Shown here piece by piece: positions 4,025 to 48,700 of a stretch of 64,000 bases of DNA. This stretch comes from Phyllobates terribilis (taxonomy: Eukaryota), in NCBI RefSeq assembly GCF_046119375.1, contig NW_027362846.1, positions 6,014,001 to 6,078,000 of the forward strand. Reading direction: 5' to 3'. The position numbers and the translations under genes are program-made. The number at the start of each line of letters is the position of its first letter. Position 1 is the stretch's first letter. The notes under the pieces were generated by a model that was not told where the DNA came from, did not search any database, and was given only the letters and a program-made list of their open reading frames with translations.

Positions 4025-4429
4025 GCTGGAACCCCTGCTGCCTTGGCCAGATCTTGTTGCCTTAGCCGGCTTGGTGTTTCTCCCACCCCCCGCCAGCTTG
4101 GACCGGGAGGTGGGAGCCGGGGGCCCAGCCCCGGAGGCCAGTCCCACCACAAGCTTTCCTTCCTGGGAAGGGGGCAGACAAAAAGTCCCAGATAGAAAAA
4201 AAAAAACCTCCCTTCCCAGGAGCTCTCTCCACAGCAGCACTCAGTCCAGGAAGCACACTCAGCACAGCTCACTGCAGGCTCCACCTCCACCACTTCCTGT
4301 AGGGAACTGCAACAGGCTGAACTGGAATGGAGCCTCTTGCTATGTGCACTGCAGTCTGCTATATACCGTGCCTGCCTGCCTAGCACTGATATCTATGCAG
4401 CTGGATTAGTCCTCAGAAGGACTGTTAGT

Positions 4430-5110: not shown

Positions 5111-5274
5111 GCTGTCACGCAGAAGTTATCTATTCTGAGGTTAAGACTGCTAAAGACCTTTTGGTGACATCACGGTCATGTGACCATAATGTCACCCAAG
5201 GTCCTTTAACTGCAGGAGTCTAGGAACTGAAGAGGAGCCAGGCTGGTATGTACCGTATGTGCTGTATGTGTGTA

Positions 5275-6703
5275 CAGTGGGGAAAATAAGTATTTGATAC
5301 ATTTCCGATTTTGCAGGTTTTCCAACCTCCAAAGAATGGAGAGGTCTGTAATTTTTATCGTAGGTCACTTCATCTGTGAGAGACAGAATCTAAAAATAAA
5401 ATCCAGAAAATCACATTGTAGGATTTTTACATAATTAATTAGCATTTTATTGTATGAAATAAGTATTTGATACAATAGAAAGCAGAACTTAATATTTGGC
5501 CCAGAAACCTTTGTTACAATTACAGAGCTCAGACGTTTCCTGTAGATCTTGACCAGGTTTGCACACACCGCAGCAGGGATTTTGGCCCCCTCCTCCATAC
5601 GGATCTTTTCCAGATCTTTCAGGTTTCGGGGCTGTCGCTGAGCAACATTGAATTTCAGCTCCCTCCAAAGATTTTCTATTGGATTCAGGTCTGGAGACTG
5701 GTTAGGCCACTCCAGGACCTTGAAATGCTTCTTACGGAGCCACTCCTTAGTTGCCCAGGTATGTGTTTCGGGTCATTGTCATGCAGAAAGAGGAGGGAAG
5801 GAGGTTTTTGGCCAAAATCTCCCCATCCATCCTCCCTTCAATACAGTTCAGTCGTGCTGTCCCCTTTGCGGAAGAGTACCCCCAAAGTATGGTGTTTCCC
5901 CCACCATACATCCCGGTTGGGACGGTGTTCTTGGGGTTGTACTCGTCCTTCTTCTTCCAAACATGGCGAGTGGAGTTGATACCAAATAGTTCTATTTTGG
6001 TCTCATCTGACCACATGACCTTCTCCCATGCCTCCTCTGGATCATCCATACGGTCATTTGTGAACTTCAAACAGGCCTGAACATGTGCTGACGTGACCAG
6101 GGGGATCTTGGGTGCCCTGCAGGATTTTAATTTTAATCCATGACGGCGTAGTGTGTCACTAACAGTAATGTTTGAGACTGTGGTCCCAGCTCTCTTCAGG
6201 TCATTGACCAGATCCTCCCATGTAGTTCTGGGCTGATTACTGACCTCTCTCAGAATAATACTTACTCCATGAGGTGAGTCCCAGACCAAGGAAGATTGAG
6301 GTCATCTTGTGTTTCTTCCATTTTCTAATAATTGTGCCAAAAAATGTTGCCTTCTCACCAAGCTGCTTGCCTATTGTCCTGTAGCCCAACCCAACCTTGT
6401 GCAGTTCTACAATTTTGTCCCTGGTGTCCTTGCACAACTCTTAGGTCTTGGCCATGGAGGAGAGGTTGGAGTATGATTGAGTGTGCGGACAGGCGTCTTT
6501 TATACAGATAACGAGTTCAAACAGGTGTAATTAATACAGGTAATGAATGCAGAGTAGGAGGGCTTCTTAAACCAAAAAAAACAGCAGAATTCTTTCTGGT
6601 TGGTAGGTGATCAAATACTTATATCATGCAATAAAATGCAAATTAATTATGCAAAAATCGTACAATGGGATTTTCTGTTTTTTATTTTTAGATTCTGTCT
6701 CTA
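5275..6703 (-). mobile_element. Tc1-like DNA transposon, degenerate, one TIR truncated
   Basis: TA|CAGTGGGGAAAATAAGTATTTGA terminus at 5275. Transposase fragments on the - strand ([12 protein letters not shown]-type N-terminus, [19 protein letters not shown]). Partial inverted TIR at ~6605-6703. Confidence 0.92.
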
Positions 6704-7009
6704 CCATTTTATGAGCTGCCTTGAATAATAACCAAGCTTATTCTATGGAAAAGTCTTATTTGTACAAGTACCCTGTGAATTGTAAAGTGCTGCCAAATAT
6801 AAAAGTACTTATTATACATATAGTTGCATTAAAAATTATTCACCTTCCTTTCCAAATTCCGTTTATTTCCAAAATTTACAAACGTTTTGCTGTTTGCAAT
6901 AAACTAATAAAACAAGAACAATATAAAAAGCTCAACACAACTAATATAACATGTGGTTTCTCTAAATTCACCACAAAATTGGACGTTTAATGATTCCTGC
7001 CATCCAAGA

Positions 7010-22110: not shown

Positions 22111-22854
22111 CAGCACACTACGGCCCCCTCCAGGGCTCAACACCCTTATCGACCCATCTTTCCAACACAAGGTTTGGCACATAGAGAGGTAGGACATATA
22201 GTCGTTAGGGACCATCCATATTAAAAGGTCACCTTGACGTGGTTGGAAGCTTTGTGCTTGTTGATCAAAAACCACTAACTAAGCACCTAATGTTTACAGA
22301 AATATTGGAGTTCATGTAATCAGTAGTCGCAGTGCGCTGACACATCGAGTATTAGTATGTTGGTATATTGGCCACATAGAGGATTAATTAAATACTAAAG
22401 GTGTGCGGGTCCTATTTTTTTTGTATTATCCATTGTACAATATTCCACAGCTACGACTCTCTCATTTCATTCAACAGAAGCCGCCTATGTGGTCAATTCG
22501 TTTCATCATTTATACCTTATTCAGGACATTCTGCAACAACTGGGCGTCGCCTTACTGGAAAGGGGCGTGGTCTAGAGCGAGGCACCGCGCACTGAAAGAT
22601 GCTGCAAAACGGAAGCACACATTCCTGGCACAAAGGAAGCGCCACCTAGTGGTTTGTGTAAACTTAGCCTAAACACGTGCACATTGATCAAACAGCATGA
22701 ACCTGCGATAAATCTGCCCCATCGTCTCCACTGCCTCAATGAAGAGCTCAGCATGGATGAAATAAAGGAGGCGCAGTGTCAGGCCTAGGGCTCGTTCACA
22801 CCTCTGCTGTTCACGTTCATGTTCTATCCATGTTTTTGACAGACAGAATATAAA

Positions 22855-24932
22855 CACACGTGGCTCCGCTCCATACACCTCGTACACACACGGCTCCGCT
22901 CCGTACACCCCGTACACACACGGCTCCGCTCCATACACCTCGTACACACACGGCTCCGTACAGCTCGTACACACGCGGCTCCGCTCAGTACATCTCGTAC
23001 ACACACGGCTCTGCTCCGTACACCTCGTACACACGCGGCTCCTCTCCGTACACCTCGTACACACGCGGCTCCTCTCCGTACGCCTCGTACACACACGGCT
23101 CTGCTCTGTACACCTCGTACACACGTGGCTCCTCTCCGTACGCCTCGTACACACACGGCTCCTCTCCATACACCTCGTACACACATGTGTGACGCCTACT
23201 CACTCGCTAGCCCACCCTGAGAGACGGGGGTACTCGGAACCGGGCCTCCAGGTAGAGGGTGGATGCAGTCGTGGCCTAGGCCCGGCCCGTGCCCAGGGTT
23301 GTCACATCAAAATAAGGGCCAGGAGGGACGGTGGTAATCGAGTGGATGTATTGACTACTCCACCTGTGGAGTCCGGTGATTCGCCACCAGCGCTGCAGCA
23401 GTCCTCTGAGGTGGGGATGTAGTGGCAGCAGAAGATGGTACTACTCCCCACAGGCGGAGCAGGGCCTGAGGGCAGAGAGGACGGATCAGAGGGAGTCGTA
23501 GTGGGTGGTGCGGTGTTGCGCTGAAATAAGGGACCGGAGGCTGTCTTCCAAGCTTTACTCACGTTGTTAGATGTCAGCTGCAAGGCTTCTCCTTGCTCCT
23601 CGCGGCGCGCTGCAGCCACCAGGAAGGGGTTCAGCACACTCCGGGTAGTTCGGGTGCATCAATCAGTACCCCCTGCACCAGAGTGTTCCTAGACTTTCCC
23701 ACTAGGTCCTCTCCTGTCCGTATGTGGTGCGTGTTGTAAGGCTGGGTCTCCCTCTGGCTATACACAGAACAAGGGTACGGGTAGCGACTCCGCTCCATCC
23801 GTTACCCAGCGGGATCCTCTAAGCCTCCGGGCTTTTCTGACTAGGACATGAAGTAGCAAAGCCAGATTTCGGGGGGCGGTACCCCTTTTGCAGCAGGAAT
23901 CCCTCTGACTAGGCCAGAATAGTGAGGACAGGTGGCGTATGCCGAAATGTCTGCATCCCCCTGGGATCCTTTTGCCTGTGGAGCTTGTCTCCTCTGCTCC
24001 CCTCCAGGCCTTCTTAGGTAGGGACCTTGACCGGGTAGAGACAGCCTTTAACTCTAGCCCGCTCCTCGTCTCAAGGCCAGAGAACGAGGACCGTTTATCT
24101 TCAATAGGCTGCAGGTTCACACAGAAAGCCACGTTCAGTGATGAAGATCACAGTCAAAGACCATGAACTTAAGATGGCCGTTTATTAAATATGAATTTTG
24201 TGGTGTAACCTAAAGTGCGTCCTCCACTACATGGTTCCCCCTATCTTTTGGTTCCCCCCATCTCCTCTTATCCCGGCTGGGGCAGCACCCAGGTGCATAT
24301 AAGCCCCCCCTCAGGTGGGAGAGGTGTAGTGTTGGATGGATGGCTGAGTCCTGAGAGGTGCTCCTTCCTTACCTCGGAGAGGAGATACCACACCTCGGTC
24401 TGAGGTGCAGTACTCCTGTGGTGACTGAACCCTCAGGGGCGCCACAATGGCTCCGCTCCGCACACCTCGTACACACGCAACTCTGCTCCGCACACACACG
24501 GCTCCTCTCCGTTCACCTCGTACATGCGCGGCTCCGCTCCGTACGCCTCGTACACGCGCCGCTCCGCTCCGTACGCCTCGTACACGCGCCGCTCCGTACG
24601 CCTCGTACACGCGCCGATCCGCACGCCTCGTACACGCGCGGCTCCACACACCTCGTACACGCGCGGCTCCACACACCTCGTACACACGCGGCTCTGCTCC
24701 GTACACATCGTACACGGGCGGCTCCGATCCGTACACCTAGTACACACTTGGTTCTGCTCCGTACACCTCATACACACGCGGCTCTGCTCCGTACACCTCG
24801 TACACACGCGGCTCTGCTCCGTACACCTCGTACACGCGCGGCTCTGCTCCGTACACCTCGTACACATGGCTCTGCTCCGTACACCTCGTACACACGCGGC
24901 TCCGCTCCGTACCCCTCGTACACACGCGGCTC
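22855..24932. repeat. 30-bp CpG-rich minisatellite upstream of ZNF gene A, split by a solo LTR
   Basis: Unit cacgcggctccgctccgtacacctcgta(ca), with variants, at 22855-23187 and 24447-24932. Confidence 0.93.
23188..24446. mobile_element. Solo LTR (~1.26 kb), TGTGACGC...GGGGCGCCACA family
   Basis: TG...CA termini; imperfect short duplication (atg) of the flank; same family inverted at 37001-38358 and related at 50859-52039. Confidence 0.85.
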
Positions 24933-25105
24933 TGCTACATCCACACTGTAAACCCCTCCTGACCCCACACATAAACTTCAGCTCATCCAGCACCATGACA
25001 ACCAGCACAGCAGAGTCCTGCATCCACTGAGGCCCCTGATCATGTGACCCCTGACTCCTCCCCTCCTGTGACCTCATCACAGGTCCTGTGCGCACAGAGC
25101 AGCCA
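24933..25105 (+). promoter_or_regulatory. Putative promoter block of ZNF gene A
   Basis: Near-identical to 45448-45612. Contains TCATGTGAC (E-box-like), TGACCTCA and TGCGCA (NRF1-like). A candidate first-exon donor ggag|gtatgt follows at 25134. Confidence 0.55.
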
Positions 25106-25739
25106 TATATGTGGTGGCGGCTCTGCAGGTGGAGGTATGTGGAGTCTCCATTACTCGCAATCAGGATTAGCCGTTATTCACACTCGTGCGTCTATTTTGT
25201 GTCTGCTTTTCTTGCATGGTGACATAAATCATCCCTCTGATTGACAGCTGGCTGCTCGCAGGGAGGCTGCTGACAATCAGTGTGATGTCGTCAGTCACGT
25301 CCCATCAAGAAGCAGAGCCAAAGAGAAGCCGCTGCTCTGTCTACGTGACTCATCAGGAGCCGCAGGAGCAGTCCATCACCGATCTGTTCTCGCAGACATT
25401 GAGACAGGCTGTTAGGAACTATCTGCCTTTTACTTTTAATATGTCCGTGTTCACACCACGAGTGCAGCGTTCAGGCCAAACCTCCTCTGGTCCTCAAAGC
25501 GAAGCTCATTAATGGCCGCCATAAAAATCCACTTCTTCTTCTTCTTCCGACATCATCCAGGATCAGATCCACAGATTACTGCTTTATACCAGAATCAGTG
25601 ATTGTATTATTACATAGAATTATTGATGACGTTACATCTTCTCATCTTCTTCTCATTCAGGTCTCTACAATATCGGATCCTCTCAGTGAAGATCTTCTAT
25701 AGAAGAGAAGTCTCCTCGACGGATAGGGACAGAGACAAG

Positions 25740-28700
25740 ATGGTGGAGAGGATATTCCACCTCACCCTAGAGATCCTCTTCCGGCTTACTGGAGAGGTGA
25801 GAGATTCTGATGACGTCACATTACATCATTCTTATCTATGGGAATAACAGATGGACAGAACTGGAGAGGTGAGGACTCTGGAAATGTCTGGAGGGAGATT
25901 TATTAATGTGTCTCTCCATAACCAGGATTACACAGTAGTGAAGAAGACCTCTAGTGAGCGCTGTCAGGACCCTGTGTCTGAGGGATGGGGAAGACCCCTG
26001 AGCCCAATCATGGGGCCTCCACCTCACCCCCTGATACATGAGGACATCAATGACCAGAAGATCCTAGAACTCACCTACAAGATGATTGAGCTGCTGACTG
26101 GAGAGGTGACACTGCTGGGAATGCTGGGACATTATACAGTAACGCTATGGAGGGATCGGGGGATGACTGTATCATTGTATGTGTCAGGTTCCTATAAGGT
26201 GTCAGGATGTCGCTGTCTATTTCTCCATGGAGGAGTGGGAGTATTTAGAAGGACACAAAGATCTGTACAAGGACATCATGATGGAGGTTCCCCAGCCCCT
26301 CACATCACCAGGTAATAGACAGGACTAAATACACACGGCCTATAATTATCTGTATGTAAAGAATGAATTCAGCCCCTGTATGTGTTTCCTCCAGATCTAT
26401 CCAGTAAGAGGACAACACCAGAGAGATGTCCCCGTCCTCTTCTTCCACAGGACTGTAAACAAGAAGACCCCAATGTTCCTCAGGATCATCAGGTAGATGG
26501 AGAGAAGGTGTCATGAGATCTCCCCTATGATGTGTAGACGGCTGTGAAGGTCTTGTGTTCAGTCTTGTTTTATCCACCAGTATTATATGTTTTATACTTG
26601 TGTAATGAGAACGGTGGAGATGGCAGGATTAGAGCTGATCATAGATGGGACTTCTCCATCTGTCTGTGACTTTTACAATATTTGTTTCAGGGTGAAGATC
26701 TGACCCATATTAATACTACAGAGACATATGTGAGGGGTGATGAGCGGTGTAAAGAGGAGATTCCTACATATGACCACCCAGGTGAGTAGTGACCACTAAA
26801 TGCAGAGAAGTCACAGATCCTGTGGTCATTATATTATGAGTTTGATCACACAAGTAAGTGACGTGCATTTTACTTGCAGATAGATTTGATGCGTAATAAA
26901 ACAAAAGCTTTTTTTTCACTTTTTTTGATTAACGCGTTTTGGCAGCAAATCTTTAATGCTCAGAGTTTTATTTGCTGCAGAAAGGCGCCATGTCTCCAAT
27001 TGTAATGTAATTGTGAGTTGCCAGATTACAGCTGAATGTCAAGAAGAGAGCCGGGTCACACACAGAAGTCAGGCAGGTGGACATCTAAGATGGAGAAGCC
27101 AAGGTCAATATCTAGCAGCAGTACACGTCCCGGAAGAGCAGTCAAGTGAGAAGCCAAACCGTTCTGCGGTCAACAAGAAGTATGTAGGCAGATCAGGAAA
27201 GGGTTGAGAAGTAGGGTCAGGTAATTATCTGGTCAAAGCCCAGTTTTGATTCTCCATTGAACATTTCACTAGAAAAGATCAGTGACAATACACACAAAGG
27301 AAATAAACGTGTCTATAACAAAACAGGTGTAATTGCAATAATGTCCTAGGAGAAATACTTCATTTTCTGGAACAATTTTAATGGCGCCAACTATTTCAAC
27401 CATGACTGTGTACAGAGAAATGTGAGACAATATAGAGATTAAAAATACAATTTATTAGATCGCAGTTGAAAACACATAAAAATACAAAAAGCCATTTAAG
27501 AGGGATCAATGTAATCACAAAAAACAATGGAATGAGGCATCTGGATGAGTCCTGGATAAGTCCTAAGCATACAGCCTTGAAGGGGTATTCCCATCTCCAA
27601 AATCCTATCCCAAAATATAGTAGGTGTGATAATAATAACAGAAAATACCTCCAATTAGAAATGTACTCCGAGTGTCCTGGGATCACCACGCTGACGTACC
27701 GACCTCCATCCCCTTACAGCAGAAGCACAAGGTGGCAGAGATAACATTCGTGACTGTGCCGCACACTGGAATGTTATTGTCGGGGGAGTTGCCAATTCGG
27801 ACCTCGGCCCCCATGAGTGGCTCAGGGCAACAGTCCATCCTGTTGGTTATGGCGACGCTGGATGTCTTGTAGCTCTTGCCCAGGTCCAGCTTCCACCAGG
27901 GATCCTTCTCCAGGTTGGTGTGGGTGCAGAAGTCACTATTGAAGTCGGTGTCTTTGTTCTCATCGATGGCGTTCTTAGCCAATATGCTCCTGGTGGCATA
28001 CGGATAGTCCGACACCTGGGAGGCCACTCCGGTCCTTGCTATGTTTGTGGTCCAGGTGCAGGAGCAAATCCCAGAGCCAGAACCACAGATCCCAGTAGAA
28101 TCAGAGAAGATACAAGATTCATCCAGATTGTGCAGGAGCAGCTCCTGTGAGTACAGACTGCAGGGAATAGTCACTGATTACCAGGGAACCAGCATTTATC
28201 AGATGTGGAGATTACACAGGACCTTCACTTACATCTCCTGCAGGATGAATCTTGTATCTTCTCTGATTCTACTGGGATCTGTGGTTCTGGCTCTGGGATT
28301 TGCTCCTGCACCTGGAGCCACAAACATAGCAAGGACCGGAGTGGCCTCCCAGGTGTCGGACTATCCGTATGCCACCAGGAGCATATTGGCTAAGAACGCC
28401 ATTGATGGGAACAAAGACACCGACTTCAATAGTGACTTCTGCACCCACACCAACCTGGAGAAGGATCCCTGGTGGAAGCTGGACCTGGGCAAGAGCTACA
28501 AGATATCCAGCGTCGCCATAACCAACAGGATGGACTGTTGCCCTGAGCGACTGATGGGGGCCGAGGTCCGAATCGGGAACTCCCCCGACAATAACATTCC
28601 AGTACGCGGCACAGTCACGAATGTGGTCTCTGCCACCTTGTCCTTCTGCTGTAAGGGGATGGAGGGTCGCTACGTCAGCATGGTGATCCCATGACACTCG

Positions 28701-30208
28701 GAGTACCTGTCGATGTGTGAGGTCGAGGTTTATTCAGACTCCAATTAGAAATGTGGTATAGTTCTCCTGATTCTTTGTCACTTACCCCATGTGCAGAGCA
28801 TTGCAGTAGCTTAGGTATCCATAGTTATGACCACTAGCAACTAACTTGCAATGCCCTGAACATGGGGTAAGTGACATAGCGAATCAGAAGAACTATACTA
28901 CATTTCTAATTGGAGATATTTGCTAATCTTATTTTTATTACACCTCCTACATATTGGTATAGTTTCTCGGAGATGTGAATACCCCATCTTACATGTTTTT
29001 ATGGCGTGTATTTTTATCTGTTGCTGTAGATTGTAATGTAATAAAGCTTATTTTTAATCCTCCTTTTATTGCCTGAAACGTTTCTGCCTGTATGTATGTA
29101 TAGAGAAATGTTATAAAATATAAGGAATTGATATAAAAAAATAATAAAATCAGATTTATTCTTGGCAGATGACTGTGGTGTCAAACCAGATACCCATGAA
29201 AAGCGTGCCATTATTCCAGCTATACCTCCAGCCCTTCAGAGCAAAAATCAATCATCTGAGCCTTTTCAATCCGTCATCTACTTGGATTCATCACAGACTG
29301 TTAAGCAAAATGAAAGCCAGAGAAGGGATGTCGAACATCAAATAATTCCCACAGGGAAGAAACCATTTTCCTGTTCAGAATGTGGGAAATGTTTTAAAAC
29401 TAAATATAAATTGCTTAAACATCAAAGATTTCACACAGGAGAGAAGCCATATTCATGTTCAGAATGTGGGAAATGTTTTATCCAGAAACCAGATCTTCAT
29501 AAACATGAAAAATTTCACACAGGAGAGAAGGCATATTCATGTTCAGAATGTGGGAAATGTTTTATCCAGAAATCAGATCTTCATAAACATCAAAGAATTC
29601 ACACAGGAGAGAAGGCATATTCATGTCCAGAATGTGGGAAATGTTTTGAACATAAATCTAAATTGCTTATGCATCAAAGAAGTCACACAGGAGAAAAGCC
29701 ATTTTCATGTTCAGAATGTGCGAAATGTTTCAGCAATAAGTCAAATTTGCTTAAACATTACAGAAGTCATACAGGAGAGAAGCCATATTCATGTTCAGAA
29801 TGTGGGAAATGTTTTATCCAGAAATCAGATCTTCATAAACATCAAAGAATTCACACAGGAGAGAAGCCATATTCATGTTCAGAATGTGGGAAATGTTTTA
29901 TCCGGAAACCAGATCTTCAAAAACATCAAAGAATTCACACTGGAGAAAAGCCATATTCATGTTCAGAATGTGGGAAATGTTTTATCCAGAAACCAGATCT
30001 TCATAAACATTACAGAATTCACACAGGAGAGAAGCCATATTCATGTTCAGAATGTGGGAAATGTTTTATCCGGAAACCAGATCTTCAAAAACATCAAAGA
30101 ATTCACACTGGAGAAAAGCTATATTCATGTCCAGAATGTGGGAAATGTTTCACGCAGGGTTCATGTTTAATACAGCATATACAGTTACACAAAATAAAAA
30201 GGGATTAA
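25740..30208 (+). CDS. KRAB-like C2H2 zinc-finger gene A (XlCOF/XlCGF type), 10 fingers, ~529 aa; coding exons 25740-25796, 25926-26105, 26188-26311, 26395-26492, 26691-26781, 29169-30208
   Basis: All introns GT-AG with consistent phases (total 1590 nt). KRAB-A-like [33 protein letters not shown]; [15 protein letters not shown] linkers. Confidence 0.9.
27663..28122 (-). pseudogene. Fucolectin (F-type lectin) copy 1, inverted, frameshifted, 3'-truncated
   Basis: Reverse complement of 28245-28708 with a few substitutions, two 1-nt deletions, and RMDCCPEP in place of RMDCCPER. Confidence 0.9.
28245..28748 (+). pseudogene. Fucolectin (F-type lectin) copy 2 with signal peptide; premature TGA at 28692
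   Basis: [20 protein letters not shown] signal peptide; [16 protein letters not shown]-x26-RMDCCPER fucose-binding motif, [34 protein letters not shown] intron at 28147-28243 lies just upstream of the ATG. Confidence 0.92.
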
Positions 30209-30971
30209 TAGAAGGACTTACTAGGCCGATCGCAGAGACGATTCAGTTTAGCTGGAGGGAAGCAGTCAAACGAACCGTTATGGAACAGGACCCCCGCTTA
30301 CACAAATATGTATAACCCGGCATGAGTATAGATCAATATTCGGCCTGATCTTTTATGCCGACAGGGGCACTGCCCACACACTCCCCTGTGATGACCTCAC
30401 GTGGGCTGGTCTCCGCCCTTCTTGGTTTTATTAAATCTCTAATTTTCTGCGATAACTCCTCACTGGTTGATCGCAGAAGTTAGCAAGTGATGCCATCTTT
30501 TTTATTGCAAATTTACCTGTGACGGATCAACCCCGTACTCCAAGATTTTGCCACATGGGGGTTGTCGTAGCGCCTATGCAGCTAATGGGACATAATGTTA
30601 CAAAGTGGGGTGAATATTGTGGATCACATATTGTTGGACATTTTGTGATGTGACCAAAGCACTCCTGGCCCCCACCTTCCTGTGCTCACTTAGCAGTGGC
30701 AAACAGACAATGTGCTGATTAATGGGTTGTTGCCTAACTGCTGTCTGGGAGCCTACTGTGGGTATTATCTGGTGAGAACAATGGGTGCTAAATATAGCCT
30801 GTGTGATTCTCTATAAAACCTGCTTGTAAGAATAAAAGTTTTAGTTCATCTTGGAGACACAGTGCGATAGTCATATTTTATATATCCCAGTGTAAGAAAA
30901 GCCTTTCCATGTCCGGGGCCGGCAGAAGAAGATTGGACATCTGCGGATGGGGTAACTAGCTCCCGTCACAC

Positions 30972-31021: not shown

Positions 31022-32468
31022 ATGGAAGATATCTACCGGAAGCTAAAGAGGAATACTTTGAAGAACCTTGTGGAAGCTCGAGGGTTAACCGCCAGCAACA
31101 AAACAAAAGCGGATTTGATAGCAGCCATTATGGAGCTCGACAATGCAACAACCTCCAACGGGAACGTGGAAGAGACTGAATTCCAGAGGGAGGTAAAGAG
31201 CAGACTGGCACTTTATGCTCCCAACCCGGCAGTACAGATCATAGATAAGGTGATGGCTGATGTGCGTACTGATCTGGATAAAAAGATGGAGATGGAGAGG
31301 ACAGAGCGGATGGAGCTAGCCAGGATGGAGATGGCAGAGCGGACCAAGATAGAGCTAGCCAAGATGGAGATGGCGGAGCGGAGACAGGAGATACAGCGAG
31401 CTGGGGAAGCCCTGGCTTCCTCCCCGGTACCAGCAGGGGTAAGCCACAAAATGATCCAATACAATGCCTTCCGACAGTTGGGGGAGGCAGAGGAAGACAT
31501 TGATGGCTTTCTGCAGGACTTTGAGCGGCAGTGTACACTTCATAAAGTGGAGCCGGAGGATTGGGTCCAGATTCTGGCCAACAAGCTGACAGGCCGGGCA
31601 GCGGATGCCTATCGCACTGTATCGGATCAGGACTGTATGGACTATAAGCGAGTCAAAGAAGTGATCTTGGCCCGGTATGCTCTAACACCAGAGGCATACC
31701 GTCAAAAGTTCCGCAAAACCACAAAACGGGAAACGGATACCCACGCTGAATGGGCCTGTAAACTATGGCAGTCACGCTTACAGTGGGTACAAGGTAGCAA
31801 AGCAGACACGAAGGAGGACGTCCTACAGCTCATCATGTTAGAACGATTCTTTTACTGGGTTAACTCCCGAGACGCAAGAATGGCTTCGGGACTGACCGAT
31901 GAACATTATGATGCCAGGAGGGCCCAATTGTCAGGGTCCAAAACTGTCTCAAGGGGCCCTCCCATGGGTCTGGAGGCCCCTAAACCACAGAAGCTTGGCG
32001 GGGGACCCACCAATACCCCGGCCTACCAGAGTCCTCCTGGGGTGCGATGCCACACCTGCCATCAACTGGGTCACCTGCAGAGACACTGTCCCAACCGGAC
32101 CCAGCGCACCCAGTGGCCAAAACCGGAAACGACTACCTTCAACCGGGCCGCTGTACACTGCTACCAAGACGAAGCCGACCCGGCATCGGTGGCTATGGCT
32201 GAAACATATCCTGTCACTACCCGGAGACAAGCTCGAGCTGCGGAGGCGGAATCACACTCGGAGGAGGCCCAGGTAAGACACTACAGCTCTTCTCGTATTC
32301 CCATAGCCAGACACATTTCATGGGACACCCCAGCAGAATTTAGGAAGGAGGTACTAGAGGATCCCTCATTGCAGGGGTATCGCGGGAAGGCACAGGAGGG
32401 AAGAGGGGTACTGGAAGGTGAACAGTTTATATGGCATCAGGGACTCCTCTACAGGGTTACCGGGCAAA
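31022..32468 (+). CDS. Gmr1-like Gag (SAP-like N-terminus, SCAN-like capsid region, CCHC knuckle) continuing into the pre-integrase region
   Basis: LKNLVEARGL...KADLI, FLQDFERQC, LTGRAADAY, PEAYRQKFR, LIMLERF, CHTCHQLGHLQRHC; no D(S/T)G protease motif. Confidence 0.8.
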
Positions 32469-33339
32469 AAACCAGACAATGTGAACTGAGGTCTAAGATG
32501 GCAGACATACAAGAAACAGAGGCATGTTCACACTAGCAAAAAAGAAGCAAGACAAAAATATATCTCATACCCTACCATAATTATATATAAATGTAAAGCA
32601 AAGTTGCATAATAAATATAGGGTACTTAGTGAACTATTTTTGATCAAAAAAAGTATACAAGCCGTCCCACCAGCGGCAAGGTGACCCTAAATTGGGACGG
32701 TACCTATACTGCCTATATTAAAAACCTTACTGTATATCAAAGTTGAAGTAATGCATATAAAAGGGTAGACAAATAGGACCGGGTCCCAACTCCAGACCAC
32801 CTAGGCCCGTGGTAAGCTACATATATACCAATCAGCTCAACAAAGGGCATGCCACACCCTTAAATTGCACAGAATGCAAACAAGTCAAAAAACCAGACAA
32901 TGTGAACTGAGGTCTAAGATGGCAGACATACAAGAAACAGAGGCATGTTCACACTAGCAAAAAAGAAGCAAGACAAAAATATATCTCATACCCTACCATA
33001 ATTATATATAAATGTATATAAATGTAAAGCAAAGTTGCATAATAAATATAGGGTACTTAGTGAACTATTTTTGATCAAAAAAAGTTGGGACCCGGTCCTA
33101 TTTGTCTACCCTTTTATATGCATTACTTCAACTTTGATATACAGTAAGGTTTTTAATATAGGCAGTATAGGTACCGTCCCAATTTAGGGTCACCTTGCCG
33201 CTGGTGGGACGGCTTGTATACTTTTTTTGATCAAAAATAGTTCACTAAGTACCCTATATTTATTATGCAACTTTGCTTTACATTTATATATAATTATGGT
33301 AGGGTATGAGATATATTTTTGTCTTGCTTCTTTTTTGCT
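32469..33339. mobile_element. 871-bp insertion with tandem plus inverted internal repeat and 16-bp TSD (Penelope-like architecture)
   Basis: AGGGTTACCGGGCAAA at 32453-32468 and 33340-33355. Segment A (32469-32790) is partly repeated at 32887-33085 and inverted at 33086-33339. Confidence 0.75.
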
Positions 33340-35950
33340 AGGGTTACCGGGCAAACTCACTCAGGGACGAGCCCCACTGTAAAACGACAGCTGGTAGTTC
33401 CCAAAAAGTATAGGCAGGAGTTGCTGCGAATCTCTCATGACATACCCTTGGCGGGGCACCTCGGAGTCAGCCCCACCAGGCATCATCTGACACAAAACTT
33501 CTTTTGGCCAGGGTTATTCCATGATGTTCGTCAGTACTGCCAGACCTGTGACAGTTGCCAGCGCATTGGCAAGAGGGGAGATCGCTGCAAGGCCAAATTA
33601 CACCCCCTTCCCATTGTGGAGGAGCCATTTAGCCGAGTAGCGGTCGATCTGATAGGGCCGTTAGCCAAACCCAGTCCATCAGGGAAAAGGTATATATTGA
33701 CAGTGATAGATTACACCACGCGGTATCCAGAGGCGGTTGCCTTACCTAACATACTGGCAGAGACGGTGGGGGCTGCTCTGCTCCAGGTTTTCTCACGGGT
33801 TAGATTTCCCCGGGAGATTATCTCGGACCAGGGCACCCAATTTACGGCAGAGGTGACCAGCCAACTGTGGAGACTGTGTGGTGTAAAGTCCATTAGAAGC
33901 GCCCCATACCACCCGCAAACCAATGGGTTGTGTGAGCGCTTTAACGGAATGTTAAAACAACTCATTGGGACGTTCACCCGGACCTACAGGGACTGGGAGA
34001 AATTCTTGCCGCACCTCCTGTTCGCCTATCGGGAGGTGCCCCAAGAATCTACGGGGTTCTCCCCATTTGAACTGTTATATGGGAGGCGGGTGAGGGGGCC
34101 CCTAGACTTAGTACGAGAACTCTGGGAAGGGGAGGAAACCATAGCAGGAACCCCTATCGTGCCCTTCGTGCTGGAACTCCGGGACCGCCTGCAGGAGTTG
34201 ACTCAGGCTGTGTGCGTGAACATGCAGGCGGCCCAACGGCTCCAGCGCGTATGGTACGATCAGAGGACTAGAGAATGCACCTTCGAGATAGGACAGAAGG
34301 TCCTGGTACTAGAACCAGTTAGGCAGAACAAATTCCAGGCCGCATGGCAGGGGCCTTACCGGGTAGTGGGGAAAATAGCCGACACCACCTTCAATGTCGC
34401 CGATTGTGACGACCCCAGGGTTATCCGCATGTTCCACGTGAATATGCTGAAGCCCTACCGGGAGCGCCCTGAAGAGGTAGCTTCCATCTGCGCACCCGAA
34501 GCAGAGGATTTAGCCGAACTCCCCTTACCTGATGTCTTAGGTGAGAGGACTCAGTCGAAAACCTGGGACCAGGTACACTTAGGAGAAAACCTAGGGACCC
34601 GGGAGAGAGAGCAGGCCGAGACATTGCTGAGGCAGCGTCAGAGGATGTTCTCAGAGAGACCGGGGTTCACCCGACTTGCACAACACAAGGTTGAGACACA
34701 AGATCAGACCCCCCTGAGACAACCCCCCTTCCGCGTCCCGGAGTCTGTATGAGAAGGGATGCGACAAGAGATACAGGAGATGTTGCGTTTAGGGGTCATT
34801 GAGGAGTCAGATAGTCCCTGGGTGTCCCCTGTAGTGTTAGTGCCTAAGAAAGATGGGACTACCCGGTTTTGGGTAGACTATCGCAAGCTAAATGAGAAAA
34901 CTGTGACAGATGCGTATCCCATGCCGCGTGTGGACGAGTTGTTAGACCGGCTGGCTGGGGCAAAGTATTTGACCACCATCGATCTATGCAAAGGCTATTG
35001 GCAGATTCCCCTAAGTCCTGATGCTATTCCCAAGTCTGCATTTGTCACCCCGTTTGGCTTATTCCAGTTTTGGGTTATGCCATTTGGGATGAAGAATGCC
35101 CCCGCGACCTTCCAGAGGCTGGCTGACCGGCTTCTGGATGGTCTCCAGGACTATGCTTGTGCCTACCTGGATGACATCGCCGTCTACAGCGCGACATGGG
35201 ATGAGCATCTAAATCATCTAGAGACAGTATTGGATAGGATCCACAAAGCCGGACTCACCCTGAATCCCAACAAGTGTCACGTAGGCAAAGCAGAGGTGCA
35301 GTATTTAGGACATTGGGTGGGGGGTGGAAAACAACGACCGGAACCCGCCAAGATTGAGGCCATAGCCAAGTGGCCCACCCCACATGCTAAAACCCAAGTC
35401 ATGGCCTTTCTAGGGACAGCAGGGTATTATAGGAAATTTGTCCCTAATTACAGCAGCATTGCCAAGCCCCTCACTGATCTGACACGTAAGAACCTCCCCC
35501 GCCAGTTAACTTGGACCCCCGAGTGTGAGGAAGCCTTCCGCCAGCTAAAGGACGCTCTCACAAATACCCCGATATTGGCCGCACCCGATCCAACTAAATG
35601 TTTCCTTGTTCACACGGACGCATCTATGTTTGGGTTAGGGGCAGTACTGAGCCAAGTTGGGCCGGACGGCCAAGAACACCCAATAGCTTATCTGAGTCGG
35701 AAATTACTGCCTCGAGAAGTCAGCTATGTGGCCATCGAAAAGGAATGCCTGGCAGTAGTATTTGTAAATATATTTGTATGGAAGATAGTATTCCCTCATA
35801 ACGGATCATAACCCCCTGGTATGGCTTAATCGGGTCTCCGGGGACAATGCCAGACTACTACGGTGGAGTTTGGCGCTACAACCGTTAGACTTCACCATCC
35901 ACTATAGACCCGGCAAGCAAAATGGTAACGCCGATGGACTAAGCCGACAA
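33340..35950 (+). pseudogene. Gmr1-like pol: integrase then RT-RNase H (stop at 34750, 3' lesions)
   Basis: ORFs 33319..34752 and 34759..35811 with canonical motifs. Confidence 0.9.
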
Positions 35951-37000
35951 ACTGACCTGCTACCAACCTCATAAATCGTGGACCTCCTCCAGCTGATCCG
36001 TCGGGGAGCAGACTGGGTAGGCCGATCATGTCCGAGAAGGGGGAGGATTGTGACGGATCAACCCCGTACTCCAAGATTTTGCCACATGGGGGTTGTCGTA
36101 GCGCCTATGCAGCTAATGGGACATAATGTTACAAAGTGGGGTGAATATTGTGGATCGCATATTGTTGGACATGCTGTGATGTGACCGAAGCACTCCTGAC
36201 CCCCACCTTCCTGTGCTCACTTAGCAGGGGCCAACAGACAATGTGCTGATTAATGGGTTGTTGCATAACTGCTGTCTGGGAGCCTACTGTGGGTATTATC
36301 TGGTGAGAACAATGGGTGCTAAAAAATAGTCTGTGTGATTCTCTATAAAACCTGCTTGTAAGAATAAAAGTTTTAGTCCATCTTGGAGACACAGTGCGAT
36401 AGTCATATTTTATATATCCCAGTGTAAGAAAAGCCTTTCCATGTCAGGGGCCGGCAGAAGAAGATTGGACATCTGCGGATGGGGTAACTAGCTCCCGTCA
36501 CATTACCTTTACTTAGAGACCACACATTACATGACTCACTGTCCGTTATTTTCATTTTCAGAAAGGCTCTAACTTGCTTCTTTAAGAGTGGTCTTGGCCA
36601 GTTTTGGATTGCATCTACTTTACTGATCTGGGGTTTGATCTCGCCTCTACCTACTACATATCCTAGTTATTTGGCCTCTTTATTTCCCATGGCAAAATGT
36701 TTTCAGATTTATAGAAAACCCTGCCTTCCTGAGAGGATCAAACGCCGCCTGGACCTTTTGCAGGTGACATCTCCAATCTGGGCTGAAGATTACGATATAT
36801 AAAGTATGATGCAGTGTAATTCTTACGGATTGCGAGGATCCAGTCCATGGCACTCTGGAAGGTGGCCAGGGCTCCCTGCAGACCAAACAGCATCCGGACA
36901 TATTGGAAACATCCGTCGGGCATAGAGAAGGCAGTCTTCTTCTTGGCTTCTTGTGACATGGGGATTTGCCAATATTTCTTAGTTAAATCCAAGGTGGTTA

Positions 37001-44324: not shown

Positions 44325-45447
44325 CTCCTCTCCGTACACCTCGTACACACGCGGCTCCGCTCCGTACACCTCGTACACGCGAGGCTCCGCTCCGTACACC
44401 TCGTACACGCGCGGCTCCGCTCCGTACACCTCGTACACGCGCGGCTCCGCACACCTCGTACACGCGCGGCTCCGCTCCGTACACCTCGTACATGCGCGGC
44501 TCCGCTCCGTACACCTCGTACACGCGCGGCTCCGCTCCGTACACCTCATACACGCGCGGCTCCGCTCCGTACACGCGCGGCTCCGCTCCGTACACCTCGT
44601 ACACGCGCGGCTCCGCTCCGTACACCTCGTACACGCGCGGCTCCGCTCCGTACACCTCGTACATGCGCGGCTCCGCTCCGTACACCTCGTACACGCGCGG
44701 CTCCGCTCCGTACACCTCGTACACGCGCGGCTCCGCTCCGTACACCTCGTACACGCGCGGCTCCGCTCCGTACACCTCGTACACGCGCGGCTCCGCTCCG
44801 TACACCTCGTACACGCGCGGCTCCGCTCCGTACACGCGCGGCTCCGCTCCGTACACCTCGTACACGCGCGGCTCCGCTCCGTACACCTCGTACACGCACG
44901 GCTCCGCTCCGTACACCTCGTACACGCGCGGCTCCGCTCCGTACACCTCGTACACGCGCGGCTCCGCTCCGTACACCTCGTACACGCGCGGCTCCGCTCC
45001 GTACACCTCGTACACGCGCGGCTCCGCTCCGTACACCTCGTACACGCGCGGCTCCGCTCCGTACACCTCGTACACGCGCGGCTCCGCTCCGTACACCTCG
45101 TACACGCGCGGCTCCGCTCCGTACACCTCGTACACGCGCGGCTCCGCTCCGTACACCTCGTACACGCGCGGCTCCGCTCCGTACACCTCGTACACGCGCG
45201 GCTCCGCTCCGTACACCTCGTACACGCGCGGCTCCGCTCCGTACACCTCGTACACGCGCGGCTCCGCTCCGTACACCTCGTACACACGCGGCTCTGCTCC
45301 GTACACCTCGTACACACACGGCTCCGCTCCGTACACCTCGTACACACGCGGCTCTGCTCCGTACACCTCGTACACACGCGGCTCCGCTCCGTACACCTCG
45401 TACACACGCGGCTCCGCTCCGTACACCTCGTACACACGCGGCTCCGC
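44325..45447. repeat. 30-bp CpG-rich minisatellite upstream of ZNF gene B, ~37-38 highly homogeneous units
   Basis: gtacacctcgtacacgcgcggctccgctcc repeated perfectly over long stretches. Confidence 0.97.
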
Positions 45448-45612
45448 TACATCCACACTGTAAACCCCTCCTGACCCCACACATAAACTTCAGCTCATCC
45501 AGCACCATGACAACCAGCACAGCAGAGTCCTGCATCCACTGAGGCCCCTGATCATGTGACCCCTGACTCCTCCCCTCCTGTGACCTCATCACAGCTCCTG
45601 GGCGCACAGAGC
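45448..45612 (+). promoter_or_regulatory. Putative promoter block of ZNF gene B
   Basis: Near-identical to 24933-25105 up to cagagcagccat. Confidence 0.55.
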
Positions 45613-45703: not shown

Positions 45704-48700
45704 ATGGAGAAGGAGAAGAAGAAGATGGTGGAGAGGATATTCCACCTCACCCTAGAGATCCTCTTCCGGCTTACTGGAGAGGTGAGAGATTCTGATGACG
45801 TCACATTACATCATTCTTATCTATGGGAATAACAGATGGACAGAACTGGAGAGGTGAGGACTCTGGAAATGTCTGGAGGGAGATTTATTAACGTGTCTCT
45901 CCATAACCAGGATTACACAGTAGTGAAGAAGACCTCTAGTGGGCGCTGTCAGGACCCTGTGTCTGAGGGATGGGGAAGACCCCTGAGCCCAATCACGAGG
46001 CCCCCACCTCACCCCCTGATACATGAGGACATCAATGACCAGAAGATCCTAGAACTCACCTACAAGATGATTGAGCTGCTGACTGGAGAGGTGACACTGC
46101 TGGGAATGCTGGGACATTATACAGTAACGCTATGGAGGGATCGGGGGGATGACGGTATCATTGTATGTGTCAGGTTCCTATAAGGTGTCAGGATGTCGCC
46201 GTATATTTCTCCATGGAGGAGTGGGAGTATTTAGAAGGACACAAAGATCTGTACAAGGACGTCATGATGGAGCTTCCCCAGCCCCTCACATCACCAGGTA
46301 ATAGACAGGACTAAATACACACGGCCTATAATTATCTGTATGTAAAGAATGAATTCAGCCCCTGTATGTGTTTCCTCCAGATCTATCCAGTAAGAGGACA
46401 ACACCAGAGAGATGTCCCCGTCCTCTTCTTCCACAGGACTGTAAACAAGAAGACCCCAATGTTCCTCAGGATCATCAGGTAGATGGAGAGAAGGTGTCAT
46501 GAGATCTCCCCTATGATGTGTAGACGGCTGTGAAGATCTTGTGCTCAGTCTTGTTTTATCCTCCAGTATTATATGTTTTCTACTTGTGTAATGAGAACGG
46601 TGGAGATGGCAGGATTAGAGCTGATCATAGATGTGACTTCTCCATCTGTCTGTGACTTTTATCATATTTGTTTCAGGGTGAAGATCTGACCCATATTAAT
46701 ACTACAGAGACATATGTGAGGGGTGATGAGCGGTGTAAAGAGGAGATTCCTACATATGACCACCCAGGTGAGTACTGCCACTAAATGCAGTGAAGTCACA
46801 GATTAAAAAAAATTGTGTTACATGTAATAATCTGTGTCCTGTCCGGATTTGTAATCTTTATATTAATTGTTTATTAACCCCTTACTGACAATGTCAGTAA
46901 TAGTACGTCCCTGTGCCCTGGGCCTTATGGCTAACACCCGGTAATATGTGCCAGGAGCGGTCCCACAGTGGCACATTAATCCCCAAAATGCTGCGATCGA
47001 AGTCGATTGCAGCATTCCGGGAGCAAGGGAAGGTAACCCCTCTTACCTTGTATCCAGGATCCCGCGCTCTCTCTGCTGGGTCTGGTAGTTGCCATGGTGA
47101 CCTGATGTCATCATGACGACATCCGGGTCACCAGGCATCAGCAAGTTAGTTAGATCGTTCTCAGTGCACGTTCTAACTAACTTGTGCCAGTGCAGGACTG
47201 ACAGCCCGCATAGCACAGAGATGCTCCTGCACCTCTATGCTATGCAAGTGATCAGGCTGCAAAAAGTGAAAGTCCCATAGTGGGACAAAGTGTAAAAGTA
47301 ATTAAAAAAGTGCTAGAAAGTGGGTAAAATTAAAATAAAAATTGCAAAAATATTAAAAAAATGAAAAATAATGAAAAAATAAAAATAGTGTACCCATAAA
47401 TAAATATTATTATAAAAAAAAAAAAACATTAAAAGTACACACATTTGGTATCGCCACATCCGGAACGACCAGACCTATAAAACTGTCCAACTAGTTAACC
47501 CCTATAGTGAACACGGTAAAAAAATAAAAAAACGAAGAAAAAAATGATGCTTCATCATCATACCGCCAAACAAAAAATGAAATAAAACGCGATAAAAAAG
47601 ACGAATGTAATTAAAAATAGTACCGCTGAAAACGTCATCTTGTCCTGCAAAAAACAAGCCGCCATACAGCTCCATCAGCCGAAAAATAAAAGTTATAGCC
47701 CTCAAAATAAAGCGATACAAAAAAATATTTTTTTCTATAAAATAGTTTTTATTGTATAAAAGCCCCAAACCATAAAAAACTATATAAATGTGGTACCGCT
47801 GTAAACGTACTGACCCGAAGAATAAATTTTACCACACGCGGAATGGCATAAAAAACAAAAAGCAATTTCTGAATTGTTGGTTTTTGTTTATTCTGCCTCC
47901 CAAAAATCAGAATAGAAAGCGATCAGAAAATGTCATGTGCCCGAAAACGGTACCAAGAAAAGCGTCAACTTGTGCCGCAAAAAAACAAGCCCTTGTATGA
48001 CTCTTCAGCCGAAATATGGAAAAATTATTTTTCTGCCCTTTAGGGTGTGACAGCTGCCAAATATAGAAACCCGATATGAATCTGGTATCGCTGTACTCGC
48101 ACCGACCTGAAGAATAAAGTTGTCTAATCACTTATACCGCACGAGGAACGGTGTAAAAAATAAACTCTAGAGTTAGGCTTGTGCTAGGGTTAAGGTTGTG
48201 CTAGGGTTAGGTTTGTGTTAGGGTTAGGGTTGTGCTAGGGTTAGGATTGTGTTAGGGTTGTGCTAGGGTTAGGTTTGGGTTAGGGTTGTGCTAGCGTTAG
48301 GTTTGTGTTACTGTTAGGGTTGTGCTAGGGTTAGGATTGTGCTAGGGTTAGGGTTAAGGTTGTGTTAGGGTTAAGGTTGTGCTAGGGTTAGGTTTGTGTT
48401 AGGGTTAGGGTTGTGCTAGGGATAGGATTGTGCTAGGGTTAGGTTTGTGTTAGGGTTGTGCTAGGGTTAGGGTTGTGCTAGGGTTAGGTTTGTGTTAGCG
48501 TTAGGGTTGTGTTAGGGTTAGGGTTGTGCTAGGGTTAGGTTTGTGTTACTGTTAGGGTTGTGCTAGGGTTAGAGTTGTGCTAGGGTTAGGGTTGTGTTAG
48601 GGTTAGGATTGTGTTAGGGTTGGGGTTGTGCTAGGGTTAGGGTTGTGCTAGGACTGTGCTAGGCTTAGGGTTGTGCTGGGGTTAGGATTGTGTTAGGGTT

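What the first reader, a model, noticed from the sequence alone, without database searches (positions are those of the whole stretch)
27581..28986. Head-to-head fucolectin gene pair captured inside a palindromic MITE, in a zinc-finger intron
Seen: two near-identical F-type lectin copies face outward (27663-28122 on -, 28245-28748 on +). The pair sits inside a long-palindromic MITE and is bracketed by a 16-bp direct repeat CTCCAATTAGAAATGT (27649-27664 and 28739-28754) that belongs to the MITE arm. The + copy keeps a GT-AG intron (28147-28243) before its ATG and has no poly(A), so capture appears DNA-level rather than retroposition. Its terminal codons and stop (..DSN TAG) overlap the MITE sequence. 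Known: H-x26-RxD-x4-R is the F-type lectin fucose-binding motif; it is intact in the + copy and mutated in the - copy. Inference: this may be a Pack-type DNA element carrying an innate-immune/skin lectin gene, a route for lectin amplification that I do not know to be described in amphibians.
Basis: partly seen in the sequence, partly recalled or inferred. Interest (0 to 1): 0.85.

Follow-up and report, generated by a model that had tools for sequence, protein, structure and literature searches.

The report
Palindromic fucolectin pseudogene inside a MITE
Two broken, intron-less copies of a frog fucose-binding lectin gene lie head to head inside an old hairpin transposon in the intron of a KRAB zinc-finger gene of the golden poison frog. 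They became numerous most probably because the zinc-finger gene itself was duplicated many times, so this looks like an ordinary pseudogene and not a mobile lectin-carrying element.

Summary
The structure is real. Two F-type lectin arms of about 465 nt (27663-28124 minus, 28243-28742 plus; 15 substitutions and 2 indels) face away from a 118-nt spacer. They sit in a 320-bp palindromic MITE-like element and are bracketed by an exact 16-bp direct repeat.

Neither arm is an intact gene. The minus arm has two frameshifts. The plus arm has an in-frame TGA at codon 150. Both lack the conserved C-terminal tail.

Both arms lack the two coding-sequence introns found in Spea and Leptodactylus fucolectin genes. 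The nearest chromosomal genes of the same frog span 2.9 and 7.8 kb. The insert is therefore mRNA-derived, not a DNA-level capture.

The window matches Phyllobates terribilis (GCA_046119375.1). RefSeq annotates at least 11 such cassettes on 8 scaffolds. All form one clade. In ten of them a gene model on the cassette's strand overlaps the cassette or lies within 10 kb of it. Model boundaries recur at identical offsets up to 2 kb away. That indicates passive copying with the host KRAB-ZNF gene, not transposition. No DNA of the other copies could be read.

Seven copies carry a central deletion of the palindrome.

Pack-type captures are already described in a frog. The scan noted this cassette before on three other pieces of this genome. 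Interest is low to moderate.

The parts
27579..27664 (.). Left arm of the palindromic MITE-like element; its last 16 nt (27649-27664) are copy 1 of the flanking direct repeat
   Evidence: Inverted repeats I3 and I6. 16-mer hits. Reconstruction of the 320-bp element.
27663..28124 (-). Minus arm: intron-less fucolectin pseudogene fragment running from 2 nt upstream of the ATG to codon ~154 (..HSEY). Two 1-bp deletions (near 28050/28051 and 27703/27704); RxDxxxxR changed to RxDxxxxP. GT at 27663-27664 is shared with the 16-mer (2-nt microhomology).
28125..28242 (+). 118-nt unique spacer at the palindrome centre. In plus orientation it reads as 22 nt of possible 5'UTR exon, then GTGAGT (28147), then a pyrimidine tract and CAG|G before the ATG. 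This is a possible retained 5'UTR intron. It contains a 15-nt mini-palindrome at 28132-28146.
   Evidence: The same pyrimidine tract plus CAG|G ATG stands before the start codon in Spea and Leptodactylus.
28243..28742 (+). Plus arm: intron-less fucolectin pseudogene, ATG at 28245, in-frame TGA at 28692-28694. Homology to the parental protein ends at ..YSDS. CTCC (28739-28742) is shared with the 16-mer (3-4 nt microhomology). The apparent stop TAG at 28746-28748 lies in MITE sequence.
28739..28754 (.). Copy 2 of the 16-bp direct repeat (a duplication of MITE sequence, target-site-like)
   Evidence: The mirror position in the right arm holds a single copy (28900-28915).
28755..28988 (.). Inner hairpin and right arm of the MITE-like element
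   Evidence: Inverted repeats I5, I7, I3.
25512..26313 (+). Upstream exons of the host zinc-finger gene, including the KRAB exon at 26185-26313
   Evidence: tblastn of the annotated 206-aa model P0069. PF01352 is on record for it.
28055..28150 (+). Terminal exon of the annotated KRAB-only model P0069. It is made of the antisense of the minus arm's signal-peptide part plus the spacer, and its stop is TGA at 28148-28150.
   Evidence: This is a gene prediction; no transcript evidence was seen here.
29167..30208 (+). Zinc-finger exon of the host gene (10 C2H2 fingers), 179 nt downstream of the MITE end

Best explanation
This is a dead, processed (mRNA-derived) fragment of a Phyllobates terribilis fucolectin gene, present as an inverted duplication. 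It entered an old 320-bp palindromic MITE-like element once. That element lies in the intron between the KRAB and zinc-finger exons of a KRAB-ZNF gene.

The insertion duplicated 16 bp of MITE sequence. Both junctions show short microhomology.

The geometry fits target-primed reverse transcription from both ends of a staggered break (twin priming) or a snap-back cDNA. The left arm is antisense, the right arm is sense, and the mRNA 5' ends meet in the middle.

The cassette then multiplied passively. The host gene was copied by segmental duplication within KRAB-ZNF clusters, giving at least 11 annotated copies. In one lineage (7 copies) the unstable palindrome lost about 550 bp around its centre.

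The cassette most likely has no lectin function. Its visible effect is on annotation: it produces spurious 'fucolectin-like' genes and splits the host gene models.

Shown: the structure, the defects, the absence of the introns, the single clade, and the recurrent gene-model context.
Inferred: the reverse-transcription mechanism (about 0.45 on its own) and the passive mode of amplification (about 0.85).
For: Structure and defects.

Identity of the genome: P0063 (149 aa) equals the window's plus-arm ORF, and P0069 maps at up to 100%.

Processed origin:
- Spea has exons 3001-3079 | 6350-6635 | 6759-6921.
- Leptodactylus has exons 3001-3076 | 3203-3485 | 3993-4170.
- The two species share both coding-intron positions: after the signal peptide, and at NP|VCG.
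- Ranitomeya mis-models break at the same two points.
- The coding sequences of P0002 and P0068 span 7849 and 2909 nt.
- Both window arms are contiguous across both positions.

Insertion signature:
- That paper found 5' inversions in 13% of processed pseudogenes.
- The P. terribilis genome holds L1 and CR1 elements (PMC12208295).

Single origin: all cassette copies form one clade (100/99), sister to P0002/P0068.

Passive amplification:
- There are 11 loci on 8 scaffolds, three on one 4.9-Mb scaffold and two on one 8.8-Mb scaffold.
- In ten, a gene model on the cassette's strand overlaps the cassette or lies within 10 kb.
- KRAB or C2H2 hits are on record at six.
- With the ORF at 10001, identical offsets recur on different scaffolds: start 8065 twice, start 10891 three times, end 12614 twice.
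- Offset 8065 maps to within 15 nt of the host exon's ATG in this window.

Central deletion: the type II proteins start [16 protein letters not shown]. That is the plus-strand reading of 27661-27708. It is joined to codon 5 of the plus arm.
Against: - No DNA of the other loci or of the parental genes could be read. Colinearity of the flanks rests on gene-model coordinates, not on alignments.
- One locus (P0066) has no neighbouring model.
- Some scaffolds may be haplotigs, so 11 is an upper bound on true paralogues.
- Unannotated copies at unrelated sites cannot be excluded.

Against a classical LINE event:
- There is no poly(A), and both arms are 3'-truncated.
- The target is not TT/AAAA.
- The two arms overlap by about 460 nt, whereas twin-priming overlaps have a median of 12 bp.
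- The plus arm seems to retain a 5'UTR intron acceptor. That needs a retained-intron transcript as template.
Confidence: 0.62

Rival explanations
1. Transposition-independent DNA repair capture (a Pack-TIR in the sense of Tan et al. 2021). A break or stalled fork in the hairpin-prone MITE was repaired by template switching with microhomology. The repair copied an intron-less donor (an older retrocopy elsewhere, or free cDNA), folded back to give the inverted duplication, and re-entered the MITE 16 nt behind the exit point. Amplification was then passive, as in the best explanation.
For: - Microhomology is present at both junctions (2 nt and 3-4 nt).
- The breakpoint is internal in an old, 80%-arm TE.
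- Such features characterise most animal Pack-TIRs, which have median microhomology of 2 bp (PMC8277862).
- Inverted duplication and a short duplication at the re-entry point are typical of fold-back template switching (established knowledge).
- This reading explains the lack of poly(A) and of an endonuclease target.
Against: - It needs an intron-less donor that has not been seen. The nearest genes have introns.
- The parental genes are on a different sequence record (the 816-Mb chromosome) from the cassette scaffolds, whereas about 60% of gap-filling captures come from the same chromosome.
Confidence: 0.25
2. One reading: a mobile Pack-type MITE that picked up a lectin gene at the DNA level and spreads it by transposition.
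For: - A non-TE insert sits between the TIR arms.
- The same junctions are present at many loci.
- Three other first-reader notes on other pieces of the genome describe such cassettes.
- Multicopy Pack-TIRs exist in a frog.
Against: - In ten of the eleven annotated copies a gene model on the cassette's strand overlaps or lies within 10 kb, with boundaries at recurrent offsets outside the MITE.
- The coding introns are absent.
- The MITE arms are only 80% alike and have no clean target-site duplication.
- The in-window paralogue, gene B, has neither the MITE nor the cassette.
Confidence: 0.05
3. The cassette is functional. Either the 179-aa type II ORFs are secreted lectins, or the intronic palindrome is transcribed with the host pre-mRNA, folds into a double-stranded RNA of about 460 bp, and feeds small RNAs or RNA editing that act on fucolectin mRNAs.
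For: - All seven type II ORFs are open and keep the hydrophobic leader core and the fucose motif.
- 451 of 467 left-arm bases pair with the right arm, MFE -999 kcal/mol.
- Runs guessed to be RNA hold 34-38% of the words of the palindrome centre.
- An annotated model splices into the cassette.
Against: - Type II copies lost one Cys of the conserved CC pair (DCGL) and the C-terminal ..VC[SW] tail present in every intact frog homologue.
- Type I copies share a premature stop.
- Open frames in near-identical recent duplicates prove nothing.
- No run is on record as RNA, and no reads could be laid.
- Type II copies have lost the hairpin.
Confidence: 0.06
4. Assembly artefact: a chimeric fold-back read produced a false palindrome.
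For: Long-read assemblies can contain false inverted duplications (established knowledge).
Against: - The arms differ at 15 substitutions and 2 indels.
- The same structure is annotated at four loci.
- Short-read runs from three samples in two studies hold 66-79% of the 31-mers of the centre.
Confidence: 0.01

Closest known systems
Pack-TIRs of animals (Tan et al. 2021, Nat Commun, PMC8277862), including 23-25 in Xenopus tropicalis
   Same: - Non-TE, partly exonic sequence lodged inside an old degenerate TIR element.
- The breakpoint is internal to the TE.
- Microhomology is present at the junctions.
- The cassette is predicted to be chimeric with the host gene's transcript.
- Origin is probably independent of transposition.
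   Different: - The insert is intron-less (RNA-derived) and is an inverted duplication.
- It is flanked by a 16-bp duplication of TE sequence.
- It is multicopy only through segmental duplication of the host gene, which that study filtered out, and not through transposition with distinct target-site duplications.
LINE-1-type processed pseudogenes with 5' inversion (twin priming; Ostertag and Kazazian 2001; PMC12016303)
   Same: - Parental introns are lost.
- The target-site duplication is of typical length (16 bp).
- The inverted segment is on the side away from the sense 3' end.
- Priming is by short complementarity.
   Different: - There is no poly(A), and priming was internal on both sides.
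- The target is not TT/AAAA.
- The two cDNAs overlap almost completely (about 460 nt against a median of 12 bp).
- One arm seems to keep a 5'UTR intron.
Pack-MULEs / Pack-CACTA of plants
   Same: A host gene fragment sits between terminal inverted repeats.
   Different: The plant elements capture genomic DNA (introns kept) and transpose. Neither holds here.
Lineage-specific expansion of KRAB-ZNF clusters by tandem segmental duplication
   Same: - The cassette sits in the intron before the finger exon of many paralogues.
- The window itself holds a tandem duplication with a period of about 54 kb, and two paralogous genes.
   Different: Nothing unusual. The cassette is a passenger.

Membership tests
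F-type lectin (fucolectin) gene | F-type / F5_F8 type C domain recognisable by profile | tested here: met
   PF22633 3.1e-23 and PF00754 8.4e-14 for the plus arm. It is 86-87% identical to P. terribilis fucolectin-6-like and fucolectin-like proteins.
F-type lectin (fucolectin) gene | Fucose-binding motif H-x26-RxD-x4-R | tested here: met
   Intact in the plus arm. In the minus arm the last R is P.
F-type lectin (fucolectin) gene | Uninterrupted full-length reading frame with the conserved C-terminal ..VC[SW] tail | tested here: not met
   TGA at codon 150 of the plus arm; two frameshifts in the minus arm. Homology ends at ..YSDS, before the tail that is present in the intact frog homologues aligned.
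Mobile Pack-type TIR element | Non-TE insert between the arms of a TIR element | tested here: met
Mobile Pack-type TIR element | Copies at unrelated sites, each with its own target-site duplication | tested here: not met
   In 10 of 11 annotated copies a gene model on the cassette's strand overlaps or lies within 10 kb, with boundaries at recurrent offsets up to 2 kb away.
Mobile Pack-type TIR element | Captured segment is a copy of genomic DNA (introns kept) | tested here: not met
   Both conserved coding introns are absent. The parental coding sequences span 2.9 and 7.8 kb. Only a possible 5'UTR intron is kept.
LINE-mediated processed pseudogene | Precise loss of parental introns | tested here: met
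   The parental intron positions in P. terribilis are inferred from two other frogs and from Ranitomeya model breaks. They were not read directly.
LINE-mediated processed pseudogene | Target-site duplication of about 7-20 bp | tested here: met
   Exact 16-bp duplication of MITE sequence. The mirror arm has one copy.
LINE-mediated processed pseudogene | 3' poly(A) tail next to the target-site duplication, and a TT/AAAA-like nick site | tested here: not met
   The plus arm runs straight from ..TCAGA into CTCCAATTAG. No A-run stands at either junction.
MITE | Short non-coding element with terminal inverted repeats | tested here: met
   320 bp after removal of the insert, 79% self-complementary, fold z = -20.
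MITE | Flanking target-site duplication and many copies in the genome | tested here: inconclusive
   No clean duplication at 27578/27579 and 28988/28989. There is one copy in the window. Genome-wide copy number is not testable with these tools.

The most novel reading that the evidence does not exclude
The full palindromes (type I, at least four loci) are transcribed within KRAB-ZNF pre-mRNAs. They fold into double-stranded RNA of about 460 bp and act as a hairpin-RNA source, through small RNAs or editing, that modulates the chromosomal fucolectin genes. On this reading the cassette is a domesticated regulator and not junk.
Probability: 0.06. Interest if true: 0.6.

Novelty: new member of a known kind. 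Interest (0 to 1): 0.25.

Why it matters
Practical value:
- At least 11 RefSeq 'fucolectin-like', 'fucolectin-1-like' or 'pentraxin fusion protein-like' genes of Phyllobates terribilis are truncated pseudogene cassettes. They inflate the apparent lectin repertoire of a poison frog.
- They also split or truncate the models of their host KRAB-ZNF genes.

Mechanistic value:
- The locus is a clean natural example of an RNA-derived insert with a target-site-like duplication and a complete head-to-head duplication.
- A derivative with a deleted centre is also preserved.
- The pair could serve as a case study for twin priming or snap-back in a non-mammalian genome, and for palindrome instability.

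The locus does not show a new route of lectin gene amplification.

Tried and rejected
There is therefore no read-level check of junctions, depth, empty sites or transcription.
- The look-up of encoding contigs returned no DNA for any P. terribilis or Ranitomeya locus because the files are too large. The flanks of paralogous cassettes and the parental genes could not be aligned.
- The search of earlier findings by sequence was blank.
- A search with the plus-strand open frame of the minus arm (27695-28147) found only the window's own KRAB model.
- The idea that the spacer holds the lectin promoter (a TATA-like TTTATC 44 nt before the ATG, as in Spea) was considered and dropped. It is too weak to weigh.
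- Snap-back at the 15-nt mini-palindrome 28132-28146 was considered. The structure is not symmetric about it.
- The reading that the minus arm comes from a spliced mRNA (CTG|GATG) rests on 2-3 nt only. It is not claimed.
- An assembly artefact was rejected because the arms differ at 17 positions and short-read runs of three samples hold the centre.
Full report
**What is in the sequence**

The region holds a large inverted repeat.
- Its arms are 27703-28050/28318-28665 (348 nt, 97%), 28051-28124/28243-28316 (74 nt, 100%) and 27658-27704/28665-28711.
- They surround a unique 118-nt spacer at 28125-28242.
- An exact 16-mer, CTCCAATTAGAAATGT, stands at 27649-27664 and 28739-28754. It occurs once more, inverted, at 28900-28915. 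That is three hits against 0.09 expected.
- Outside lie 60-nt arms at 27579-27638/28929-28988 (80%). Inside the right half is a hairpin at 28739-28915.
- Cutting out 27665-28754 leaves a 320-bp element that is 79% self-complementary from end to end. The 16-mer then appears once in each arm at mirror positions. The element folds at -159.8 kcal/mol, z = -20 against shuffles.

The insert plus one copy of the 16-mer is therefore a later arrival in a once-symmetric palindromic element. No other copy of that element is in the window. No clean target-site duplication flanks it.

**The lectin copies are pseudogenes**

- The plus arm (ATG at 28245) is a clear F-type lectin domain (PF22633 3e-23) with an intact H-x26-RxD-x4-R motif.
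- It carries an in-frame TGA at codon 150 (28692-28694), where the minus arm has GGA.
- The minus arm has two 1-bp deletions and an R-to-P change in the motif.
- Both arms stop before the ..VC[SW] tail found in the intact frog homologues aligned.
- The arms differ by 15 substitutions and 2 indels over 464 nt.

**Where the window comes from, and how many copies there are**

- The nearest proteins are Phyllobates terribilis 'fucolectin-like' models.
- One cluster member, P0063, is identical to the window's 149-codon plus-arm ORF. The 206-aa KRAB model P0069 maps onto the window.
- The window therefore matches a 6.38-Mb scaffold of GCA_046119375.1.
- That cluster holds 11 annotated loci on 8 scaffolds of 1.8-13 Mb. 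Three lie on one 4.9-Mb scaffold and two on one 8.8-Mb scaffold.
- Type I (four loci, including this one) shares the premature TGA.
- Type II (seven loci) begins [16 protein letters not shown]. This is the plus-strand reading of 27661-27708, the antisense of the minus arm's end, starting at the ATG of the 16-mer. It is joined directly to codon 5 of the plus arm and ends ..DSN-stop inside the MITE.
- Type II is therefore the same cassette with the same two outer junctions, after a deletion of about 550 bp around the palindrome centre.
- Three other first-reader notes describe such cassettes in ZNF introns on other pieces of this genome.

**Mobile or passenger?**

- In a tree, all cassette copies, including the window's minus arm, form one clade (100/99). 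It is sister to the two chromosomal P. terribilis genes P0002 and P0068, and is separate from the Dendrobates and Ranitomeya homologues. This indicates one capture in the Phyllobates lineage.
- In ten of the eleven loci a gene model on the cassette's strand overlaps the cassette or lies within 10 kb. KRAB or C2H2 hits are on record at six. At three loci a single KRAB-ZNF model on that strand (two loci) or on the opposite strand (two loci) spans the cassette.
- With the ORF placed at 10001, model boundaries recur at identical positions on different scaffolds: start 8065 twice, start 10891 three times, end 12614 twice.
- These points lie 0.1 to 2 kb beyond the ends of the MITE.
- Offset 8065 falls within 15 nt of the ATG of the host exon in this window.
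- This pattern is what segmental duplication of the host gene gives, and not what transposition gives.
- The window itself shows such duplication. Positions 5129-8777 match 59482-63997 at about 93%, a period of about 54 kb. A second ZNF gene has a 5' part 98% identical over 1083 nt, yet has no MITE or cassette.
- Caveat: this rests on gene-model coordinates. DNA of the other loci could not be fetched, and the one read-laying run was lost to a filter.

**DNA-level or RNA-level capture?**

- The fucolectin genes of Spea bombifrons and Leptodactylus fuscus both have three coding exons with the same two introns. One follows the signal peptide (..G|ATN/KN). The other lies at NP|VCG.
- Mis-predicted Ranitomeya proteins break at exactly these two points.
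- The coding sequences of P0002 and P0068 span 7849 and 2909 nt for about 530 nt of code.
- Both arms of the cassette are contiguous across both positions. The insert is therefore processed.
- Against a simple picture, all three species have a pyrimidine tract plus CAG|G immediately before the ATG.
- A retained-intron transcript would reconcile the two facts. The parental DNA is needed to settle it.

**How it probably got there**

[quoted passage not shown] P. terribilis has L1 and CR1 elements.
- At the right junction, CTCC belongs both to the 16-mer and to the D-S codons that the parental proteins also have.
- At the left junction, GT belongs both to the 16-mer and to the antisense of the conserved Tyr codon.
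- Take a 16-nt staggered break. The bottom-strand 3' end (..GGAG) could prime on ..CUCC of the mRNA and give the sense right arm. The top-strand 3' end (..TGT) could prime 37 nt upstream and give the antisense left arm. The two cDNAs would then meet at the mRNA 5' end.
- This is the geometry of twin priming. The differences are a near-complete overlap of about 460 nt instead of a median of 12 bp, no poly(A), and no TT/AAAA target.
- A snap-back cDNA gives the same topology. So does repair by fold-back template switching on an intron-less donor (the Pack-TIR gap-filling model).
- I put about 0.45 on the reverse-transcription route and 0.25 on the repair route.

**Function**

Most likely there is none.
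- The palindrome would fold into a double-stranded RNA of about 460 bp if transcribed. 451 of 467 left-arm bases pair with the right arm.
- RefSeq predicts a KRAB-only isoform ending in a 96-nt exon inside the cassette (28055-28150).
- Runs guessed to be RNA hold a third of the centre's 31-mers.
- None of this shows function.

**Comparison and verdict**

- Structurally this is a Pack-TIR, a kind already catalogued in 100 animal genomes, including 23-25 cases in Xenopus tropicalis.
- By origin it is closest to a twin-primed processed pseudogene.
- By spread it is a passenger of KRAB-ZNF cluster expansion.
The central inference, a mobile DNA-level lectin-carrying element, is not supported.
- Interest is low to moderate.

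Noticed in passing
window 5129-8777 and 59482-63997: Three collinear blocks match at about 93% with a period of about 54.3 kb. This is a large tandem segmental duplication of the zinc-finger cluster that spans most of the window.
   Followed up: partly
window 25737-26818 and 45722-46803; finger exons 29167-30208 and about 57664-59190: Two paralogous KRAB-ZNF genes. Their 5' exons and introns are 98% identical over 1083 nt, but their finger arrays (10 and 18 fingers) are only about 78% alike. Homology stops 760 nt before the MITE. This suggests recombination or conversion breakpoints inside the intron.
   Followed up: partly
window 28055-28150 and 28713: The RefSeq model P0069 ('oocyte zinc finger protein XlCOF8.4-like', 206 aa) splices the KRAB exons to a terminal exon inside the cassette. 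By the gene table, a second model begins 19 nt after the 149-aa ORF ends, which is window 28713; an ATG stands there (MCEVEV..). The cassette breaks the host gene's annotation.
   Followed up: partly
window 30518-30970 and 36049-36502, ORFs 31022-35811: 454-bp direct repeats (97%) bracket ORFs that look like gag, integrase and reverse transcriptase (read by eye, no profile search). This is an LTR retrotransposon just downstream of the host gene. The integrase-like ORF precedes the reverse-transcriptase-like ORF.
   Followed up: no
window 22854-23185, 24449-24944, 44325-45448: Arrays of a roughly 30-bp unit, 84-96% alike within and between arrays. They give long spurious ORFs on both strands.
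   Followed up: no
window 28132-28146: CAGGAGCAGCTCCTG is a 6-bp-stem, 3-nt-loop mini-palindrome at the left edge of the spacer. It sits just before the GTGAGT of the possible retained intron.
   Followed up: no
proteins P0001, P0062, P0064, P0067 compared with P0063, P0065, P0066: The centre-deleted (type II) copies carry 6-7 private amino-acid changes, including loss of one Cys of the CC pair. The full palindromes (type I) carry 1-3. The cause may be unequal rates, or arm-to-arm gene conversion in the palindromes.
   Followed up: partly
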